DNA from: Oikopleura dioica
Taxonomy: Eukaryota > Animalia > Chordata
Assembly: GCA_907165135.1 (NCBI GenBank)
Contig: OU015568.1
Coordinates: forward strand, 8,122,001-8,186,000
Length of the DNA stretch: 64,000 bases
Direction of reading: 5' to 3'
Shown here: positions 42,601 to 54,567 of the stretch, in pieces
Layout: the number at the start of each line of letters is the position of its first letter
How positions within the stretch are numbered: position 1 is the first letter of the stretch
Position numbers and translations under genes: made by a program
The notes under the pieces: model-generated
The model's input: only the letters and a program-made list of their open reading frames with translations
Databases searched by the model: none
Told to the model about the DNA's origin: nothing

Positions 42601-45600
42601 GAATCAGGAGCCCGAGCCTGTGTACGAAGATATAATTTTGGAGAAGAAAGGTGGTGGTCTTGGACTCAGTATCGTCTCTGCTAAGGGCGCTACGCAGCAT
42701 GACTATGGAATCTACATTAAATCTGTTGTCCCAGGAAGGGTTTTGAAAATTGTTCTGGAGACATAAAAGCGGGCAAATAAGAAACGCAATGAAATTTGCT
42801 AAAAATTTCCTCTTTGAATCTATGAAATTATTATTGAATCTAACCCCGAAAAAGGAGGAGCAGCTTATGATGATCGTCGATTAGCTTCTGGCGACCTTCT
42901 AGTGGCTGTTGATGACCGATCATTGGAAGGTCTATCGCAAGACAGAGCGGCGGACATAATGCGACACACAGGGAATACGGTGAAACTGACCGTCATCAAA
43001 GATGCAGCTTCCCTTTACGGCGTAGATCAGCTGTTGGCTCAGCCCAGTCCGACACGAGCCTCCGTTGAAAGCGGCGTCAAACTAAACGGTAATTATCTAT
43101 TTATCTATCGGGAATATACAGTGCGTGTTTTCGCCCACTAGAAGGTGTCCACTTGTAGTGAAAAGTAGAAGTTGTGTAAGTCTGGCGGGAATAAAGAGCC
43201 TCTTATCGTTAAACACTGCCGCAAGAATCAACAAAAGAAAAAGAGAGCTTTCTAAAACAATCCAAACTACATCCGCTTAAAAGAAGCAGAGATGTCAGCG
43301 CTGGATCGATTTTTGAACTCAGAGTACTTCGTTAAAAAGGATGCGAAGCCAAATACGAAAAAGACTGGCATAAAATCCCTAGTGGGGAAATTTGAAGTCA
43401 AGGAAAATGAACTTAAATTAGATGCAGTAAAAGCTACGACTTCGCAATCATGGCTTTGGGCAATTGGATTTAAATTTCTTAAAATTTCAACATTAGTTTT
43501 GGTCGTTTCAAAAGATCTAAGCTTGGATTTTTTCTTGAATAATTCCATAAAAAGAGACGAAAGTCCGACAAAGATTTTTCATACAAGAGAAAAACCTCTT
43601 GGAATGATAATCTTGGCTCTGAAATATCGTCAAAGGCAGAGTTTTTCAAGTCATTTTGCTACTAGAGTAAACAGGAACTTATCCACAAGCAAATACTCTT
43701 TCCGAGGGCTTGATGCTTGAAAAGCCTGATAAGGAAATATTACAGGATCTCACCAGCCGCCAGCTGAAGCACAATAGATCTCGCCAGCGACAGCGATCTT
43801 TACAAAATTTTCAAAAGCGTACATCCTGAATTTAAAATCACAAAGGGACTTCTTCACTAAACAAGCTTTTTTCAGGAATCCGTCAGAGTCAGAGCTCCTA
43901 CACGACGATAAACAATTACTATCCCGATAAGCCTCAGATTGTGTCAGCTGAAGCTCCAGTTAAGCTAACAGTAAGTTGGAGTTCTTTCGAGAGGAGGGAC
44001 TTACTTTCGACGAAATGCGTATTTACTATTCTGTCATAGACGGAGCTTCCGTTGCCACCAGCACACTTGCTAGAGGCCACTGTCAATTCTGACGGGCACG
44101 AGTATTGCTTGCCGCCCTCCAAGGAGAATACGCCAAATCATCGTCAACAAACACCTTCTGATCATGAAAGGGATCAAATGGTCGAGCTCAAGCCAAAAGT
44201 AATTCTCTTCTGTAATTTTCAGACCTGTAATTTTTTCATTAGGCCAGTCCAAAGTCTCAAAAAAGCGACAGTCAAAGTGAAAACGAGCGAACTCACAAAG
44301 ACAGACGTTCTGGTCGACGACATCGCGATGATCGAGCAAACCGGGAAAGAAAATCATCCCGCCATCGTGAACGAAGCCAAGAGAAGAAGAAATCCGACGC
44401 TAAGAGTGCGAATAAGACTGGAACACTGACGTCACAGTCGGGCACTTTAGGCAGGAAGAACAAAGGCGGAATGTGGGAAGATCCTCAGGTAAGAGTCCTT
44501 TAAACTCGAGCAAAAAGATAATTAGATTTTTCTAGCAACGACTTATTCAAGAGCAACTTGATATGATGAGAGATGAGGAGATAATCGAACTGCAAAACAA
44601 AAAGAACAAAACGGCTTCTGAAAATGAGAGGTAATATATTCTTCGCGTCATTTTTCATGATTTCTTGTAGGCTAAAAGTACTCATGGCCGAGCAAGAGTT
44701 CAGCCAGCGGTTAAAGCGCGACCACATTCCATCGGGGACTTCTGAAATCGATTCATACTCGGAAGAAGATGTTCCAGACCGTCCAGATCGAGATCTTCTC
44801 CTGAAGGTAAGTTCGCTTAGAACAGACTTCTTTACAGCTTTTTCAAAGATTCAAAGCCAGAACTCACTCAATGTCCATAAATCTGCCGAGGAAGAAACTA
44901 ACTCAACGAGCATGGCTGACGAAATCTCCCGAACACTCGAGCTGAAGGAGAAGGAACTTGCTGAGCAAAGGAAAAAAGAGGAAAAACTGGCGGCCCAACT
45001 TGAGCAGCAACAAAGAGAACTTGAGAGGCAGCAACAACTCGAAAGAGAAGAGGAACAGCGTGCTCGAGAGGCGGAAGAAAGACAACGACAACGCAAAATT
45101 GAGGAGGAAAAGCGAATGGAAGATTTGAAGAGGAGCGAAGATAAGCGATTAAAAGAACAAGAAAGGCTACTTCGGGAAGAGCAAGATGCTCAAAAAGCCG
45201 CTTTCTTGGCGGAAAAAGTATGTCATCGCTATTATTTTTCTTGCATTCAAAGCAAATTCTAGGAGGCATTTGAGGCGGAGCGCCGAAAAATGGAGGAAGA
45301 GCGTGCAGAATTCCTCCGACGACAGGAAGAATTCCGCAGAATGAAAGAAGAGCAGGAGCAGTTTGAGCGCGAGCGAGCCGAGTTTGAGCGAGAGCAACAA
45401 GCTCAGAAGCGAGAACTTGAGCAGCGTGCTCAGCAGCGGGAGCAAGAACTCCAGCGAAAACTCAGAGAGGAAGCGAGAAAGAAAGAACTCGCGAAAAAAG
45501 TTGACGCTGACAAGTTTGATCGACAACTTGACCGAGTCAGGAGACGTCGAGCTTCCGGTAAGTGGATTTTTTTGCTAAATGTTCGTGTATCAGTCTTTTT

Positions 45601-47535
45601 TGTTCAAATCGAGAGCGATTTGAAATCAATGTCGCACAGAACAACCCTTTTTATGGTCAATAAAAAGGGCTTCTTTCAGAAGAAGACAAGCTCAGTCAAC
45701 GTCGAAAATGGCTTGACGATCAGGAAAAGCTCAAAGAAGTCGAAGACGACATCGAAAGAGTCGTTCGCGAAGCCAGTCCTCCACGAGCACACCCTTACGC
45801 CGCTCCCGACGCCCCTCTTCCACCTCCACCAGATTCCGTCACTTCTAATTACGTAAGAACTCCATCAACATCTCATGTTGAAAATGGAAATTTTGATTCA
45901 AATTCCAACACGAAATTCCAGCGACGATATCGTCCTAGTATTGAACAGCGCTTAAGGGTAAACCAGTAGATTAGCGAGAAAAACATCGCATTCTGAAATA
46001 CTCAATAATTAATTAAAATAAATGATTGGGTGAAGTTAACGCTTGAACGCATATTGCGCAGATTTCTGCGCAGAGCCCCTTTAAAGCTCGATATCTCATA
46101 CTTTACTTGACCAAAATTTTTAATGGACCCCCACTTTAGGAGCTCTTTTTCGATGAGGAATCAGAATCTAGCATCGAAAAAAAATTTTGACTTCAGGATA
46201 AAATTTTGGCTTCAGAACAAAAATTTCCGATTCTTTCGAATCATGCTTTTTTAGCTTTTCAACAGTTCTGAATTAATTTTTCCGTCGATGAAATTTTTTT
46301 TTCCATGTTTAATCGCATATTTGCATCGAATTTAATATAAATTTTATCATTCGTAGATATATATTTTGTGCATTTGTATTTGCGATCAATGAAATTGAAA
46401 AAAATTGGAAAAAATGGTTCATTTTCGAGTAACTTTAGAAATCATTATTTTTAGCGAGGTTCGGGTAAGGGTTAGGATTTTAAACTATTATAAGCTTGTT
46501 TGCAAGCGTCTGAGCTTCATTCTGGTAGCTTTAATTTTCTCAAATCTCGACCACAGTCGTCGCTAGAGCGCTCTAAAGGTGCTGCGCAGAAATCTGCGCA
46601 ATATGCGTTCAGCAGGAAAACAATTTTGTGCGTTCATGCGTTAATTAACGGTGTGTAAAGTAACAATTGTAAACTTTGCTTGGTGAATTCGACTAATTTT
46701 AAAAATTGACAAGATCTGTATATGATTTTTGTCAATCCGTAGTTTCTATGAAATTGTACCAAATTGAAGTGAAAGCTTTCAATTTCCAAAACTTCATATA
46801 CTCATCTTCTGGGTGCATAACATTTCAAACGAGACCAAAATTTTACCGACCAAATTAGGAACAAAAAGCTGCTGAAGACCGTATGGAACGCGAACGAGAG
46901 CAGCTCGAAGAGTTGCTCTCTCGAAATAAATCACCAGTCCTTGTAAATTTCCTATTTCCAGTTCGAAATAGAGTCACTGACCATTTCTTATAGCCACCTC
47001 AGACAAGAAATGCAAGTATATCTTCGTACACTCCTCTTCTTCCAAATCACCATTTCACCAAAAATAAGCGACCACTATCGAGCTACAATCCTAAAACACA
47101 AGAACCTCCTCAAGAAAAATTCGTAATAATCAACCGTCAATAATTTGACTACTCACTTCCAATTTTACAGACTCCGTTGCCTCAAAAACCAACAGTGCCG
47201 ACGACGAGACCTAAAAGCGCGTACGAGCCCACTTCCAGCCCGAGTCCGGATTTAGACGAGTCTGCCGGGGTCATCGGAACCAACGAAATCTACAATGATC
47301 CACGAGAAAAGCGCCTGGCCAACATCAAGAGGTGAAATCAAGGAAGAGTGCTCTCCTCATCGTAGATTTTAGGGACAACTCCTTCATGCGAAAATCACAG
47401 CCTGAACCTTCAAAACTTAACTTTCGCGATCGAGCAAAGCTTTTTGAGCAATCTGGCGTCAGTCCACAAACAAATACGAAACCTAAAATGAGCAAAAAGC
47501 TTCTCGAACTGGAGCAGCAATTCGGCTCCAGATGA
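39626..47535 (+). CDS. AFDN: Afadin / AF-6 (RA-RA-FHA-DIL-PDZ, coiled-coil and Pro-rich tail)
   Basis: WNETRLDMFAISKP..FFGVIRFYY..ATKCIRVASNASTFDVIETLREKLRSDMRMLS, DIL region CRVNAALTIQLFSQLFHFVN, PDZ GGLGLSIVSAKG; 3' exon joins approximate. Confidence 0.93.
46044..46611. mobile_element. MITE (568 bp) in an afadin intron
   Basis: 30-bp perfect TIR TGAACGCATATTGCGCAGATTTCTGCGCAG, itself containing a palindrome; TSD not clear. Confidence 0.8.
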
Positions 47536-48076
47536 GAAGAGCTAAATTATAAAACAAACAGTAGATTCAATTTCCAGCTACTACTACTTTTATTTGCGTT
47601 CTTTCCCCACCTTGCACATATGGTTTAATTTTTTAATTTATTTTCTCGCTCCAACTTTTGAAATAAAAAATTCATTGACCTTTCCTTCTTTTTTCAATTT
47701 TTATTCTTTCAACTTCTTGTTTCGAAAATAACTAAAGTAACATTCCGTACCTCGCTCGATCCCACACAATTTCCACTGAACTATCTTCTTATCATACTAA
47801 ATAAAAATACAAAAAAACGCCCGATAATGGGTTACTTCATTCCTTCTTATACGAAACAAATGATAATAAAATACGATTTCTATTCACTTCTTTCTTTCTT
47901 TTTAACGAAATCCAGCTTATCCTTAAATTATCTAACCGCAGCAAAAATGAGCTCAGCTAAAAAACCGATCATTCACTCACAGTTACAGTAAAACGTCACT
48001 TCTGTTAATAAAACATTTCTTTTTTGATTTGAAGCTAAAACAGCAGCAACAGCAAGCATGATTTTCTTTGGTTAGA

Positions 48077-51000
48077 ATGTCTGGTCAGTTTTACAATCTG
48101 CCAGGGAACGATTTCAATAACTCGTATTCGCCCTCGAGTTACAACTCGTTTTCCGCTCATTCTGTCGGACAGCAACATCAGGACCACCCGAATATCTATA
48201 ATTACAATCATTCTCATCAGCATACGCCGGACATAAATCAAGGCTGGAATCAACAGGTTACGCCGCCTGGTCCACCAGGTTAGAAAATCGAAAATAAGAG
48301 TCCATCTTTTCAATACGCAAAATTAGCTCCAAGCAACCTCCAACGAAATTATGGCTACGGTCATACCAATTATCCATCTCCGCAACCAAATTTCGGCCCG
48401 ATTGGACAGCCAGTCCCTAGCAGAGGTTCGCCAGTTCGACCAAGAGGAATTCCATTTCGCGGTCGAGGACAGTTCAACAGTTTTGCCAAGCCAAAGCAGC
48501 CAGGTCCGAGGCCGATCAAAGCGACGGAAATTAAAGCTTGGTTGTTCGAGTGGTGCACGCAGAAGAAGCTCAAGCCCGAGTACAATTTCACTGCAAAGGG
48601 AAAATACCCCAAAGTGCGTTATATTTGTACGCTGAAAGTTGCCGGTTTGGCCAAGCCGCTAGAAGCCGTCCAAGAAGCTAAGAACAAGAAAGAAGCGCAA
48701 ACGCTCTGCGCCTGGGAGTTTTGTGAGCAGTTGGTCGAGCACAACATGGTCAACCAGTGCGCGCTGCCAAAGAAAGTCAGCACGGAAGAGTTACAGGCGA
48801 ATCAGGACACTGCCATTGTTTCAAAACATCCGCCCAATTCCAGTTTGCAGACAATCGGCTTAGTTGAAAATGGCGGCTGGAGTGCTGAAAATGCAAGAAG
48901 ACGATTGAACGAATTTTGCATGGAAGAACGTATTAGCTGCGAGTTTGAAACAACTTCTCATGGATCCCAATTCCAACACATCGCCATTTCTAAACTCACC
49001 TTGAACATCAAGAAAATAGGTCAAATCACTCAAACCGCCCAAGCGAGTAACAAGAAGACTGCCAACGCGCAATGTGCGCTCAATATGGTCCGGGAGTTAT
49101 TCAAACGAGGACTGATCGAGAAAGCTGGCGAAAAACGACGCTCGAGTTCGACGCAAATGAGCTGCGATGAAAACATCGAAGAAGTGAACGACGCCGACTG
49201 CGACGAGTTGACGGCTGGGTCGAAGCGAAAAGTCGACGAAGTCAAGGAAGAATTCGACGAAAACGGAAACTGGACATTGGAACTGGCGCGCTCTCGGCTA
49301 TCTGAGTTCTTTCACAAGCAAGGAAAACAGCTCAACTGCGAGGAGAAGGAATCTGGAGGGCCTTTCAACAAGCAATTCGTCTGTTCTACGGAGATTGACA
49401 TGCCTGATGGTCAGCATTTCACAGCTAGTGCGACAGCGCCGAATAAGAAGAGCGCGCAAAAGAAATGCGCGTTGTCGATGGTAATTCAACTTTACAAAGC
49501 GGGCCTTATTCCTGGCAACTCCGGCAAAAGACACAAGGAAGGAGCAAAAAGCAACGAAAGGACGGCCGAGCATATCCAGACTCGAGTGTAGATCTCAAGC
49601 ATCCGATTGTAATGCCCTCTTGGGGAAGCAGACGAACCACGCCCTTTGACGATCGACACTTGCAGTTTAAACTGGAAGAATTGGAATTCACTGAAGAAGA
49701 AAGAGTCGCCATCACAAGCGCTGTTGATTCAGTAACTGGGTATGCCAAGACGATTTCTGAAAAACTCAAAGCCGAAGAAGAAGCGATCAATCCCACTACC
49801 GAGTGGCTCATTACAGCACCACAGGTTTTCGAACCCAATTTTCTTCTCGTTTTTATGCCTTTTCTAGCCAGTGGGAGATTACTGCAACGATTTACTGTTC
49901 AAAGGCGAGTTGACTCCCGAGCTCGTGATTTCCTGCCAAGAAAAACCGACGATCAAGCTGCTGACTCGATTCACCAAAGAATTTGGATTGCTCCACAATC
50001 CAAACATGGTCACTAACGATGCGAAAAACAGTCGAATCATCATCGAAAAAGTCGTCAATTCTCTTCCTGTTCGTATAACTCTTAGTTTTACCTCGCCAAA
50101 GATGCGACCTAGTAACGATACTACCATCATAGAAGGTAAGAACACAGTAATTTCCGAGTAGGATACTAAATAAGAACGATCTTTTTGTGCGCTTCCAATT
50201 TTTCTTTGCCATATTTGAAATTTTCGAGCGCACAGAAAAGATCGCATAAGACTTGATTGAAAGGAGAATGATGGCGCCGGAGGAGTTTTCTCAATCTTGC
50301 CCCATCATAAAGCTCAACTGCTTGATCGAAATATCTTCTTTTTCTTTCTGGCAAGCAGTTGAGCTGTTCTATTGATACAGGTGAAGGTAGAGAAACAGCC
50401 CTCACCTGTGTTATGTAGAGTCCAACGATCCATCGGACGTTCTACCACGAACTAAATGCCTTGAGGCTCTTGCTGCTCTTAGACGTGCAACTTTTTTCCA
50501 GGTAGTTTTTTACGGTTATACTCAAAGCGCATGTTCAATGAAGCCTTTTCGAGTTATGAGTTTACTTTTCGATTTCAGAAACGCGTGGCGCCTAATTTTA
50601 ACGCAATCCCATTGTGCAGAATCCTCAAATTTTTACTCAACGAGTGGTCGAGCGATTTGGCTGGGTTGAAGTACTGGACTCTTCAGTTGATCATCCACAA
50701 GGCATTGGATACCTCTCCATATCCTCTCACAGCTGGTATGGCGTTTTTAGTTGGATCGAGCTTTATTGGTTTTTAGGAGATGGATTCAGACGAGTTTTGG
50801 CTGTAATCTCTTCTGGAATTTTGCTCCCTGAAAATGTTGGCGTTAGAGACTGGTGTGAGATTAATTTCGAAGGCGCTAAGCCGGAGGAAAATCTTGGTGA
50901 TGCTGCTGGTAAGACTTTTTATTAAGCCTCTCAACTGATAATTTTTGAACAAGGCACACTAACAAAGCAACAACGAGAAGACATCACATTCACTTTCCAG

Positions 51001-51112
51001 TCATTCTTGCGACAAGTGTCTTTTATGGTAAAAATTCTGCAACAATCAACCGGTCTTCAAAAATATTCAGAACATCAACAAAATCCTCAAAATCGACAAG
51101 CTAGAAAAATGA
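48077..51112 (+). CDS. Three DHX9-type dsRBDs followed by an ILF3/ZFR-type DZF domain (frame break near 49550)
   Basis: EIKAWLFEWCTQKKLKPEY..KNKKEAQ (DHX9 dsRBD1-like); NGGWSAENARRRLNEF..SNKKTANAQCALNMVRELF and NGNWTLELARSRLSEF..NKKSAQKKCALSMVIQLY (two dsRBD2-like); then DDRHL, ELVISCQEKPTIKLL, CLEALAALRR, QQREDIT (DZF). Confidence 0.8.
50177..50409. other. Tandem array of four inverted repeats filling most of a DZF-gene intron
   Basis: Stems at 50177-50244 (17 bp, 1 bulge), 50268-50308 (7 bp plus extension), 50311-50365 (14 bp perfect) and 50377-50409 (8 bp plus extension). Confidence 0.7.
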
Positions 51113-51341: not shown

Positions 51342-52619
51342 ATGGTGGAAGGCCAAGGTATTGGAAAAATAAAGTCGCTACAATTAATTTTAGGTAGAAT
51401 TTTTTATTTTACTTTTTGATCTAATTTAACATTTTAGCCCCTGTTACAACGTTATTGGCAACAACTAATGGTTCCGATCGAGTGACTCCAAGACTGAGTC
51501 GCAGATCGTTAGCCATTCCGTTAAGAGATACTCAAGTTTCCGCTTCCACACAGGTAAAAATTCCCCTTGACTTTCAAATCGCTAATAATCCGATTTCAGA
51601 CAGAGCCTAAGCATGCAAACTGCCGTCAAGTCATCGCCAAAACCGAAAAGAAATTCGGCGAGACGCCCCCATCCTCAAAACTTCCGCGAGAGATCTGGAA
51701 GTGGCTCCAAAACATGAGTCTCCGAAAGAACATCAAAAACGTCATCAGAGATTTCAGCAATGGCTACGCTTTCGCTGAGATTCTTGGTCATTATTATCCA
51801 GAGGTAAGCTAACGCAAAACAATTCTAGAGACGATCCTCATCCTCAATTTAGGTCGTGTCGATTGAACAGTACCGCGATGGCGATAGTTTTCCGAGCAAA
51901 CAGGCAAACTGGCATCAGCTTGAGCTCTCATTTAAGAAGATATTTGGAAAGAAACAATCTCGAAGTGAGATGGTAAGTCGCCTTTTTTGATTTGTGACAT
52001 TTCTGGGTCAAGAATAAGTCTTATTCAATAAGATAATGAACGCTTCTATCTAATTGGCTGAAATAGCCGATAGATTAGAAGAACTAGCTACTTACATCTT
52101 ATGGCATTTAAAATTGATTTTAGCTGAAACAAATGACTGAAATGACGATTCATGAAAAGCCTGGTGCGCCTCAACAGTTGATCTTTTACCTCTACGAAAT
52201 CCTTACTGCGAAAAAAGTCAACTGGATGCCTGGAGAATATCCCGAAAATTACACCGATGATAAATATCAAGCGTAAGTCCTCATTGATCAAAACTTCCAC
52301 TAATCTCTTGCTGTAGGTTACTGCCGTTTCATGCTCGACACACGGCTTCGACAGCTATAAAAACAAACTTGAAGATAACAGAAGAAAAAACGTGTCCAAA
52401 TATTAATAGTGAACGGGAAAAGACGGAAAGGATCCTTGACCGACACAGAAATTGGAAGTCTGGAGAAAAGAAGTCGCAGCCAATTGTAAGTCAATTAAAA
52501 ACTTTCACTATTTTCATCGAAATTTCTAGCGCTTTGAAAAAAGGCCGACTCTTTGTGAACTCGCCGAGCGCGTAGTTCCGCCTCCTTCTCAAGATCGTCA
52601 AAAAGCCAATACTAAATAG
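51342..52619 (+). CDS. SPATA4: SPATA4 / SPEF1-family calponin-homology protein
   Basis: LPREIWKWLQNMSL..KNVIRDFSNGYAFAEILGHYYP, KQANWHQLE, KPGA, YQA-LLPFHARHTASTAIK, RFEKRPTLCELA; start exon tentative. Confidence 0.78.
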
Positions 52620-52713: not shown

Positions 52714-54567
52714 TTAGCTCAACTTGAGATTGTTCTTCACGTATTTCACTTCTTGCGTTTTTTCTTTGAGTGGCTGGCGGGTGCCAGTATTGCTGTCCCA
52801 GATTTTGGGCGCAGAGTGTTGTTGGAAAACGCGGAGCAGAGAGGTTTCTTTCTGTTCGGCGATGAAGGCGCCGGGGAAGTGTTTTTGGAGGTATTTTTCG
52901 ACTCTTCGGTTCACTAGAGAAATTTCAGTTGCTTTGGGTTCCAATTTTTATGTACCTAAAGTGACGATAGTCATAGAAAAAGAAATCCCAAAAATCATCC
53001 AAAAGAAAATCAGCACTCTATAAAGAGTGAAGATCTTCTCGACATGCGGTGGCCAAGTAGTCATATTGCAGGCAATAGGCATGCCAGTTTCTTGGTTTGT
53101 CGGGCCGCTCTGTGGCGATGGATTTGTTAGTGCTAATAGAAAGTTAAGTTCAAAGTGAAAGGCTAAACCAATTGTAATTAATTCATGTTCGAACTTTCTT
53201 TTTTTCTACCTCTGAGGCACCATTGTTGATTGAAGATGTAATCTGCAGCAAAGTCGGGCGGGACCATTCGCGGAATGTAGTCACCAAAACCGATCTTTGT
53301 TATTGTGATGATCGAGAAATATGCCGAATCTGAAACGATGCAATAATCATCAAGCCTTGCCACTTGTGAAAACGAACCTAGATAGGTCCAACCTTCCATG
53401 TATCGAAAGAGAAAGGATGGTAAGACGACGAACAAACATATGCCGCTCGTAAAATATAGTAGCATAATTGTTCGTTTGTGAAAAACGCGCTCGATGAAGT
53501 CCTTTTTCGCATAGTTTGAGCTTCGTTTCTTGATCCATTTCTGCAGTTTAATGATTCCCTTGTCAACTGAGCGCATTTTTGGATACGAGCTATTTGCTCT
53601 TTATACCTTGTTTATTAATTTTGCTGCAGAGAATACCAAAAAGCGGGATGCTGATGCCCGCAACAAACATAGTCAAGATCTTGCCGCGTTGCGTTTTCGG
53701 AGTGACATTTCCGAACCCAATCGTGGTTGCCACTGAGCCGACATAGACGAATGTTTGGTCGAAGGACCACTTTTCTCCCTCGAAGCAATTATAGATCATA
53801 TTTGGGTAGGACTCGAAGCTCAACATAACCACATCACTTAAATTTTATTTTATCAACTTCTTTCTAAATATAAAGAAGCGCATCTTGTTTTTTTATCAGG
53901 TCACGGTGTTTTACTGACTTTGACCCAAGTTTAGCTCGATTCCTCTTTCTCAGTAACAAATTTTTGATGAGAGAGGCTGTTAGCCGACCCATCTCATTTT
54001 CTATTTATAATTACTTTCAGCAGGCTCAAGGCCCTTTATAGCCAATAACAAAATTGTCGATGTTATTAACCTTTGTTACTTACGTAAGAAGGTTTTTAAT
54101 ATAAGTCCCGGAAAGGTTGAATTCTTCATCTCTGAACAAGCTCAAATTCGTCGGCCGAAGCGCTTTTGACCATTCCTTGCCCTGAAAATCGACAATTTTC
54201 CCTTTTTCAAACCCTTTTCTACCCATTGACGATTGAGTTTTCTTTTGCGAGCTTCCATATTGAGCTGGTTAATTGCATCTTCAGTGCAATTTTGCTTCAC
54301 TAGTGCGGTAAAACCTTCCTTCAAAAAGGCCAAAGAGAATTTTTTCCCAGACTGAAGCCGCTTTTCAAGCACGTTGCAAAGTCGCTTGTTGTAGCCGAAT
54401 TCGTAGAAACTGCTGATTGCCAGTTCTCGTTTGTATTTCACCACTTTTTCTCTCGACTCCCTGCATAATTTTTCCTCGGCTTCTCGTTCGGTCAATTGGA
54501 ATATTCGCGTAAGTCCAAGGAGATAAGCTCTTAAACTGTGTTTCAACTTGTCATATTCTTGACTCAC
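52714..54567 (-). CDS. Two-pore-domain (K2P) potassium channel with atypical second filter
   Basis: M1 YLLGLTRIFQLTE; P1 WSFDQTFVYVGSVATTIGFGNVTPKT; P2 EGWTYL-DSAYFSIITITKIGFGDYIP; M4 YRVLIFFWMIFGISF. Confidence 0.88.

What the first reader, a model, noticed from the sequence alone, without database searches (positions are those of the whole stretch)
48077..51112. Chimeric RNA-binding protein: three RNA-helicase-A (DHX9) type dsRBDs on an NF90/ZFR-type DZF domain
Seen: three dsRBDs follow the DHX9/MLE signatures (one dsRBD1-like, two dsRBD2-like with GNWTLE-type starts), there is no helicase core, and a complete DZF domain ends the protein. Established: in ILF3/STRBP the DZF is N-terminal with C-terminal dsRBDs of another type; ZFR has zinc fingers before the DZF; DZF domains dimerise with ILF2/NF45; and DHX9 associates with NF90 complexes. 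Inference: this is a lineage-specific fusion that puts helicase-A dsRNA sensing on the NF45-binding module, an architecture I do not recognise from known proteins.
Basis: partly seen in the sequence, partly recalled or inferred. Interest (0 to 1): 0.85.

Follow-up and report, generated by a model that had tools for sequence, protein, structure and literature searches.

The report
Tunicate dsRBD-DZF RNA-binding fusion gene
This is a real gene of a tunicate-only family that joins three RNA-helicase-A-type double-stranded-RNA-binding domains to a ZFR/NF90-type dimerisation (DZF) domain; this copy carries a one-base frame break that is probably an assembly error.

Summary
They are a low-complexity/RG N-terminus, then one DHX9/MLE dsRBD1-type and two dsRBD2-type domains. 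There is no helicase core and no zinc finger. A complete DZF domain in seven short exons ends at TGA 51110-51112.

As assembled, this is not one ORF. The dsRBD part stops at TAG 49589-91, and the DZF part lies in another frame. The cause is one missing base at a five-A run (49546-49550). Four contigs of three sister lineages have 192 nt where the window has 191. One of them is a spliced transcript contig, and all four read straight through. The 22 codons between the break and the next ATG still evolve as coding sequence. The break is therefore very recent or, more likely, a homopolymer assembly error.

The architecture is not private to this lineage. Ascidians (Ciona, Phallusia, Styela, Clavelina) have it as "uncharacterized protein" or auto-named "RNA helicase". 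Each of the three dsRBD positions is orthologous across tunicates. The scan's first-stage readers also noted this architecture at three or more other loci of this genome. I found no paper describing it.

The likely function is a dsRNA-binding partner of NF45, analogous to vertebrate NF90/SPNR. I rate it a new variant of a known kind, of moderate interest.

The parts
48077..48278 (+). Exon 1: start codon and a Y/N/Q/S-rich low-complexity N-terminus
   Evidence: Gene model. The N-terminus is nearly identical to P0001. The donor at 48278 is used in RNA reads of a sister lineage, as the joint 48278->48338.
48279..48326 (+). Intron 1 (48 nt, GT..AG)
48327..49591 (+). Exon 2 as assembled: RG-rich stretch, dsRBD1-3 and linker. 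It ends at an in-frame TAG (49589-49591) only because of the frame break upstream.
48518..48778 (+). dsRBD 1, DHX9/MLE dsRBD1 type
   Evidence: PDB phmmer: 1WHQ/3VYY at 37 bits against 16 bits for dsRBD2. Domain tree: the split placing this domain with DHX9 dsRBD1 has support 100/97. Fold.
48866..49138 (+). dsRBD 2, DHX9/MLE dsRBD2 type (starts NGGWSAEN)
   Evidence: PDB phmmer: 1UIL/3VYX at 56 bits, with no other family below E=1. Sister of DHX9 dsRBD2 with support 95/94.
49256..49528 (+). dsRBD 3, DHX9 dsRBD2 type (starts NGNWTLEL)
   Evidence: PDB phmmer: 3VYX at 49 bits. The next best are Staufen at 19 bits and ILF3 at 16 bits. It lies in the dsRBD2-type half of the tree.
49544..49551 (+). 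Frame break: one base missing at GC-AAAAA-G (A-run 49546-49550) relative to four contigs of three sister lineages
   Evidence: The window has 191 nt where the others have 192 nt between two conserved motifs.
49546..49611 (+). 22 linker codons, readable only in the DZF frame, upstream of the first ATG of that frame
   Evidence: Against three sister lineages pN is 0.14-0.18 and pS 0.95-1.0, the same as in the flanking coding parts.
49612..49824 (+). DZF exon 1 (from the internal Met; holds RTTPFDDRH, the start of homology to ZFR/NF90 DZF)
49868..50135 (+). DZF exon 2 (the pseudo-nucleotidyltransferase core strand region, PVGDYCNDLLFKGE...)
   Evidence: (a weak DZF_N hit)
50136..50418 (+). Long intron (283 nt) with four short inverted repeats
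   Evidence: The acceptor at 50418/50419 is used in RNA reads of a sister lineage, where the loose ends carry the end of the upstream exon.
50419..50501 (+). DZF exon 3 (83 nt)
   Evidence: RNA reads cover it at depth 10-27. The transcript contig L008 skips it.
50579..50735 (+). DZF exon 4
   Evidence: Intron 50502-50578 (77 nt) is spliced out in reads beginning at 52, 30 and 28 places in three RNA runs.
50777..50908 (+). DZF exon 5
   Evidence: Pfam DZF_C at 27.1 bits, against a cut-off of 24.3
50954..51027 (+). DZF exon 6: helix 9 (KQQREDITFTFQSFLRQVSF), the NF45-contact helix
   Evidence: Alignment to ZFR. Interface residues are named in PMC3467086.
51071..51112 (+). DZF exon 7 and stop codon TGA 51110-51112
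   Evidence: The C-terminal end matches P0173 and L008.

Best explanation
48077-51112 is one gene of a tunicate-specific family. Its product of about 818 residues has, in order: a low-complexity/RG N-terminus; three dsRBDs derived from the N-terminal dsRBD1-dsRBD2 pair of RNA helicase A (DHX9/MLE), with a second dsRBD2-type copy; a basic linker; and a C-terminal ZFR/NF90-type DZF pseudo-nucleotidyltransferase domain.

Shown here: the domains and their typing; orthology of each domain position between ascidians and appendicularians; continuity of the ORF in three sister lineages and in transcripts; and expression and splicing of the orthologue.

The window's copy lacks one base in an A-run (49546-49550), which puts the DZF part out of frame. 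The codons just after the break still show coding-type conservation, so the break is either a homopolymer error of the assembly (my estimate about 0.65) or a very recent or heterozygous lesion (about 0.3).

Inferred mechanism: the DZF domain heterodimerises with NF45/ILF2 through helix 9. The interface residues Glu, Gln, Arg and Phe are kept. The three dsRBDs, each with an intact NKK motif, bind A-form dsRNA. The protein would then be the tunicate counterpart of the vertebrate NF90/SPNR-NF45 and ZFR-NF45 complexes, acting on structured nuclear RNAs.
For: Gene model and splice sites. dsRBD typing. Complete DZF: (E 6e-49). Exon 5 alone passes the Pfam DZF_C cut-off.

Nearest DZF relatives are ZFR at 270-345 bits, ahead of ILF3 at 236 bits and ILF2 at 77 bits. 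Helix-9 residues are conserved (with PMC3467086).

The same architecture occurs in Ciona, Phallusia, Styela and Clavelina and in several unlabelled transcript contigs. All 12 family members examined have exactly three dsRBDs.

ORFs are continuous across the junction in L001, L002, L003 and L008, with 192 nt against 191 nt in the window. L008 is spliced. L014 is a full-length mRNA with a 758-aa ORF.

pN is 0.14-0.18 against pS of about 0.95 in the 22 codons after the break. RNA reads confirm intron 1 and intron 50502-50578 in the orthologue. Two unchecked scan notes report 1-nt homopolymer frameshifts elsewhere in this assembly.
Against: The assembled sequence itself has the frame break, and no read or contig of the same lineage could be found. 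An error is therefore not proven.

An ATG (49612) lies 20 nt after the stop, so two products are formally possible.

The appendicularian DZF domains are very diverged, with end branches of 1.6-3.9 substitutions per site. Single exons score below Pfam cut-offs.

NF45 was not shown to exist in this genome. NF45 binding and dsRNA binding are inferred, not tested.
Confidence: 0.75

Rival explanations
1. The one-base deletion is real and fixed in this lineage, and the ancestral fusion has just split into two cistrons. One is a 488-aa dsRBD-only protein ending at TAG 49589-91. The other is a 322-aa DZF-only protein starting at ATG 49612, produced by spliced-leader trans-splicing or re-initiation.
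For: The stop and the next in-frame ATG are only 20 nt apart, and an AG lies at 49590-91. Tunicates use SL trans-splicing and operons (established knowledge; PMC1488885, listed, reports it for Ciona). All DZF exons and splice sites are intact.
Against: The Met is an internal, conserved residue in all sister lineages, not a new start. There is no pyrimidine-rich acceptor before 49591. The 22 codons between the break and the ATG keep coding-type constraint in the DZF frame, so any split must be extremely recent. The missing base lies in a homopolymer, the typical place for long-read assembly errors.
Confidence: 0.15
2. This copy is a freshly inactivated pseudogene or null allele, tolerated because the genome carries several paralogous dsRBD-DZF genes.
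For: The frame break. First-stage readers' notes on three or more other loci of the same genome describe the same architecture.
Against: This is the only lesion. All seven DZF exons, the splice sites and the interface residues are intact. The orthologue is expressed and conserved in three sister lineages.
Confidence: 0.07
3. The frame is restored in the mRNA by a lineage-specific small GT-AG intron (49588-49628 or 49588-49631, 41 or 44 nt) that removes the stop codon.
For: Both candidates give an open joined frame, and their size fits the local intron lengths of 41-77 nt.
Against: The acceptor has no pyrimidine tract. The intron would delete residues conserved in all sister lineages and would keep 15 out-of-frame residues. 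Relatives, including a spliced transcript contig, have no intron here. The removed codons show coding constraint.
Confidence: 0.03

Closest known systems
ZFR / Zn72D (zinc finger RNA-binding protein)
   Same: Low-complexity N-terminus, three dsRNA-binding modules, then a C-terminal DZF domain. The DZF is the closest by sequence: the Ciona family member scores 270-345 bits against ZFR, and P0020's only outside hits are ZFR. The helix-9 interface is kept.
   Different: The three RNA-binding modules are dsRBDs, not U1-type C2H2 zinc fingers. No zinc-finger Pfam hit appears in any family member. Ciona is reported to have a separate Zfr-like protein (PMC3467086), so this is probably an extra paralogue rather than the ZFR orthologue.
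ILF3/NF90 and STRBP/SPNR
   Same: They combine a DZF domain with dsRBDs and pair with NF45. The Ciona DZF scores 236 bits against mouse NF90 DZF.
   Different: The domain order is reversed: NF90 has the DZF first and two dsRBDs after it. The dsRBDs are of another type (ILF3 dsRBD 16 bits against DHX9 dsRBD2 49 bits). NF90 and SPNR are reported only from vertebrates (PMC3467086).
DHX9 / RNA helicase A / Drosophila MLE
   Same: An N-terminal dsRBD1-dsRBD2 pair is recognisably of this type by sequence, tree and fold.
   Different: There is no DEAH helicase core, HA2 or OB fold. There is a third dsRBD, and the protein ends in a DZF domain.
Ascidian predicted proteins: Ciona LOC100181347 (UniProt F7AFE0, auto-named 'RNA helicase'), Styela XP_039252997.2, Phallusia CAB3262648.1 and a Clavelina model
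   Same: The same architecture, with three dsRBDs in the same order, each orthologous to the window's, plus DZF_N and DZF_C.
   Different: Identity is 32-36% over the dsRBD region. The ascidian proteins are longer (834-1004 aa) and their DZF is much less diverged (354-367 bits against 173 bits on the ZFR profile).

Membership tests
DZF-domain proteins (Pfam DZF_N PF07528 / DZF_C PF20965) | Full-length match to the DZF domain | tested here: met
   The spliced 322-aa product against a profile of 14 non-tunicate ZFR DZF domains: E 6e-49, 172.7 bits, profile positions 17-339 of 381. Exon 5 alone scores 27.1 bits on DZF_C, above the 24.3 cut-off.
DZF-domain proteins (NF90/ZFR/SPNR subgroup, partners of NF45) | Helix-9 interface residues equivalent to NF90 Glu312, Gln319, Arg323 and Phe327 | tested here: met
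   The window reads KQQREDITFTFQSFLRQVSF, with E, Q, R and F at the aligned positions, as in mouse ZFR. The residues are taken from PMC3467086.
DZF-domain proteins (NF90/ZFR/SPNR subgroup, partners of NF45) | Physical heterodimer with NF45/ILF2, and presence of NF45 in the genome | not testable with these tools
   Only the window is readable. No scan note mentions ILF2 or NF45. NF45 is reported for Ciona in PMC3467086.
ZFR | C2H2 (U1/zf-met type) zinc fingers N-terminal to the DZF | tested here: not met
   No zinc-finger family appears at E<=1 in the window's dsRBD exon or in six full-length family members. True ZFR hits carry PF12874/PF12171.
ILF3/NF90-STRBP | N-terminal DZF followed by two C-terminal dsRBDs of the NF90 type | tested here: not met
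   The order is dsRBD x3 and then DZF. ILF3 dsRBDs score 16 bits against 49 bits for DHX9 dsRBD2.
DHX9/MLE | N-terminal dsRBD1 + dsRBD2 pair | tested here: met
   (split 100/97; domain 2 is sister of DHX9 dsRBD2 at 95/94).
DHX9/MLE | DEAH helicase core, HA2 and OB fold | tested here: not met
   No such Pfam hit appears in the window product or in family members, whereas a true DHX9-like hit (P0044) shows DEAD and OB_NTP_bind.
Tunicate dsRBD x3-DZF family (uncharacterised) | Three dsRBDs, each orthologous by position, plus a C-terminal DZF in a single ORF | tested here: inconclusive
   Domain content and orthology are met. A single ORF is met in sister lineages but broken by one base in the window as assembled.

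The most novel reading that the evidence does not exclude
The one-base deletion is genuine. This lineage would then show a fusion protein caught in the act of splitting: a dsRBD-only and a DZF-only polypeptide made from adjacent cistrons 20 nt apart, in an animal whose trans-splicing and operon biology could let such a fission survive.
Probability: 0.15. Interest if true: 0.7.

Novelty: new variant of a known kind. Interest (0 to 1): 0.5.

Why it matters
NF45 is known to pair with ZFR throughout animals and with NF90/SPNR only in vertebrates (PMC3467086). [quoted passage not shown] The domain order is the opposite, and the dsRBDs were taken from RNA helicase A. It looks like an independent solution to the same design. 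I found no paper on the family, and in databases it sits as "uncharacterized" or mis-named "RNA helicase". It offers a natural test of how modular the RNA-binding arm of NF45 complexes is. It also flags a likely annotation trap: UniProt's automatic name, and a frame break in this assembly.

Tried and rejected
1. My first reading gave about 65% odds to two cistrons of a trans-spliced operon, because a stop is followed by an ATG 20 nt later. I dropped it after relatives showed continuous ORFs and coding constraint across the gap.

2. RNA reads. They come from a diverged lineage (reads 88-95% alike, none 99% or more) and left 48596-50239 almost uncovered, so the junction was not tested in this lineage.

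3. Same-lineage DNA. An exact pattern allowing five or six A found nothing in metagenome contigs. The protein-guided scan found only diverged lineages. Exact look-ups of the two downstream ORF products found nothing.

4. DZF phylogeny. The tree is unresolved at the base, and no ILF3, STRBP or ILF2 sequences could be brought in by reference. Whether the family is sister to ZFR or to NF90/SPNR is therefore open. Only bit-score comparisons are available.

5. Intron rescue of the frame. I enumerated the candidates. Only two canonical GT-AG candidates exist, and both are poor.

6. Programmed frameshifting. The five-A run is not a canonical slippery heptamer and is too short for transcriptional slippage (inference only).

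7. Literature. No paper was found with DZF plus tunicate terms, or with the ascidian accessions.
Full report
**What is in the sequence**

The region has the look of an appendicularian (Oikopleura-type) genome, with introns of 41-77 nt and one of 283 nt. The organism is my inference.

The gene model on the + strand runs as follows:
- ATG at 48077.
- Exon 1, 48077-48278.
- A 48-nt intron.
- A long exon, 48327-49591.
- Seven short exons: 49612-49824, 49868-50135, 50419-50501, 50579-50735, 50777-50908, 50954-51027 and 51071-51112. All have GT..AG borders, and the gene ends at TGA 51110-51112.

RNA reads from runs labelled as the same species come from a diverged lineage (88-95% alike). They still confirm the donor at 48278 and the acceptor near 50418. 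They also confirm removal of intron 50502-50578, with reads beginning at 52, 30 and 28 different places in three runs. They do not cover the critical junction.

**The dsRBDs**

Pfam finds three dsrm stretches in the long exon. AlphaFold, run on a 16-row family alignment, gives three alpha-beta-beta-beta-alpha modules at residues 64-150, 180-270 and 310-400 of that exon. Their pLDDT is 80-93, and the linkers between them are disordered.

Against all PDB sequences, the only hits at E<=0.01 are DHX9 and its fly orthologue MLE. Taken one by one:

| Domain | Best PDB match | Bits | Next best |
|---|---|---|---|
| 1 | DHX9 dsRBD1 | 37 | DHX9 dsRBD2, 16 |
| 2 | DHX9 dsRBD2 | 56 | no other family below E=1 |
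| 3 | DHX9 dsRBD2 | 49 | Staufen 19, ILF3 16 |

Foldseek ranks the MLE dsRBD pair first. It superposes single domains on 3VYX (rmsd 1.3 A) and 3VYY (rmsd 1.1-1.6 A).

I built a tree of 56 dsRBDs from 12 family members and 10 DHX9-type helicases. It splits {family domain 1 + DHX9 dsRBD1} from {family domains 2 and 3 + DHX9 dsRBD2} with support 100/97. Family domain 2 is sister to DHX9 dsRBD2 (95/94). No other dsRBD family was in that tree; the PDB searches cover that gap.

All three domains keep the NKK motif at the start of helix 2. No helicase and no zinc-finger domain is present.

**The DZF domain**

Single exons score weakly on Pfam; only exon 5 passes the DZF_C cut-off. The spliced 322-aa product, however, matches a profile built from 14 non-tunicate ZFR DZF domains over nearly its whole length (E 6e-49).

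For the better-preserved Ciona family member, bit scores against the known DZF proteins are:
- vertebrate ZFR: 270-345 bits
- mouse NF90 DZF: 236 bits
- NF45: 77 bits

For scale, mouse ZFR scores 383 bits against NF90, and Tribolium ZFR scores 270-283 bits. The domain therefore belongs to the ZFR/NF90 branch, not the NF45 branch, and is nearest to ZFR.

A DZF tree gives two fully supported clades. The ascidian-type clade has 8 rows. The appendicularian-type clade has 5 rows and includes the window. The base of the tree is unresolved, and the appendicularian branches are very long.

Wolkowicz and Cook (PMC3467086) name NF90 Glu312, Gln319, Arg323 and Phe327 on helix 9 as the core of the NF45 interface. 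The window reads KQQREDITFTFQSFLRQVSF, with all four residues in place, as do most family members.

**The frame break**

As assembled, the dsRBD frame ends at TAG 49589-91. The DZF frame is shifted by one base, and its first ATG is at 49612. I first took this for an operon.

Relatives say otherwise. In L001, L002, L003 and L008 the motifs NKKSAQKKCAL and RTTPFDDRH are 192 nt apart in one frame. In the window they are 191 nt apart in two frames. These four contigs come from four different samples and represent three lineages; their nucleotide identity to the window over this junction is 73-75%. The alignment puts the missing base at GC-AAAAA-G, the A-run 49546-49550. Read with X at the break, the window gives the same linker as its relatives.

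L008 is a spliced transcript contig. Its ORF runs from dsRBD3 through DZF exons 1-2 with the DZF introns removed, although it skips the 83-nt exon 3. L014 is a 2383-nt mRNA-like contig with a complete 758-aa ORF of a more distant homologue.

Synonymous sites between the window and its relatives are saturated (pS 0.8-1.0). In the 22 codons between the break and the ATG, read in the DZF frame, pN is 0.14-0.18. That equals the flanking linker (0.14-0.19) and DZF exon 1 (0.13-0.17). This stretch has therefore been translated in the DZF frame for essentially all of the lineage's history.

The break is thus either an assembly error at a homopolymer or a very recent lesion. Two unchecked scan notes report one-base homopolymer frameshifts elsewhere in this assembly. 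I could find no same-lineage data to decide between the two. Canonical intron rescue is possible only with two poor candidates.

**How widespread the architecture is**

An exhaustive profile-free search found only 152 proteins at E<=0.001. The long ones fall into two groups: DHX9-type helicases, named for nematodes, a horsehair worm, a planthopper and a tapeworm (others unlabelled), and proteins with dsrm x3 + DZF_N + DZF_C.

The latter include:
- Phallusia CAB3262648.1
- Styela XP_039252997.2
- Ciona LOC100181347 / F7AFE0 (auto-named "RNA helicase")
- a Clavelina model
- several unlabelled marine transcript contigs

Every member examined has exactly three dsRBDs. Family domains 1 and 2 each form one well-supported clade across ascidians and appendicularians; domain 3 is less well resolved. 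The fusion therefore predates that split.

In this genome, first-stage readers noted the same architecture at three or more other loci (not checked by me). Full-text searches found no paper on it. PMC3467086 states that NF90 and SPNR are vertebrate-only, and that Ciona has NF45 and a Zfr-like protein.

**Mechanism**

Shown: the domain set, its typing, its conservation, and expression of the orthologue.

Inferred:
- The DZF domain pairs with NF45 through helix 9.
- The three dsRBDs and the RG stretch bind structured or double-stranded RNA.
- The protein does in tunicates what NF90/SPNR-NF45 and ZFR-NF45 do elsewhere.

**Verdict**

This is a new variant of a known kind, of moderate interest.

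Noticed in passing
window 50136-50418: The only long intron of the gene (283 nt against 41-77 nt for the others) holds four short inverted repeats with arms of 10-21 nt. It may be an inserted element.
   Followed up: partly
L001 (SRR28362898) versus window 49825-49867: Sister lineage L001 has no intron between DZF exons 1 and 2; its ORF reads ...SAPQPVGDYCNDL straight through. The window, L002 and L003 do have one, so this intron is present in some closely related lineages and absent in another.
   Followed up: no
L008 (Ga0314673_10119450) versus window 50419-50501: A spliced transcript contig of the sister lineage joins DZF exon 2 directly to exon 4. It skips the 83-nt exon 3 and so shifts the frame. 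RNA reads of the same lineage do include exon 3. The contig is either an exon-skipped isoform or an assembly artefact.
   Followed up: partly
L014 1-31: The 5' end of the full-length mRNA contig (TTTTTTGAGTGGCTGATTTTGTGTTGACCTA, directly before the ATG) resembles, from my memory only, the Oikopleura spliced leader. If that is right, the homologue is SL trans-spliced. The window's own start also sits right after an AG (ggttag|aATG, 48070-48079).
   Followed up: no
window 51455-52300 (+) and 53178-53832 (-): Downstream neighbours are a gene with a calponin-homology-like motif (DFSNGYAFAEILGHYYPE) on the same strand, and a two-pore-domain potassium-channel-like gene (TIGFGN / IGFGDY) on the opposite strand. 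Upstream (44624-47535, +) lies a Glu/Arg/Lys-rich coiled-coil-like gene.
   Followed up: no
UniProt F7AFE0 (Ciona) and the Clavelina entry: Public records name these helicase-less proteins 'RNA helicase'. The name was probably transferred automatically from the DHX9-type dsRBDs and is misleading.
   Followed up: partly
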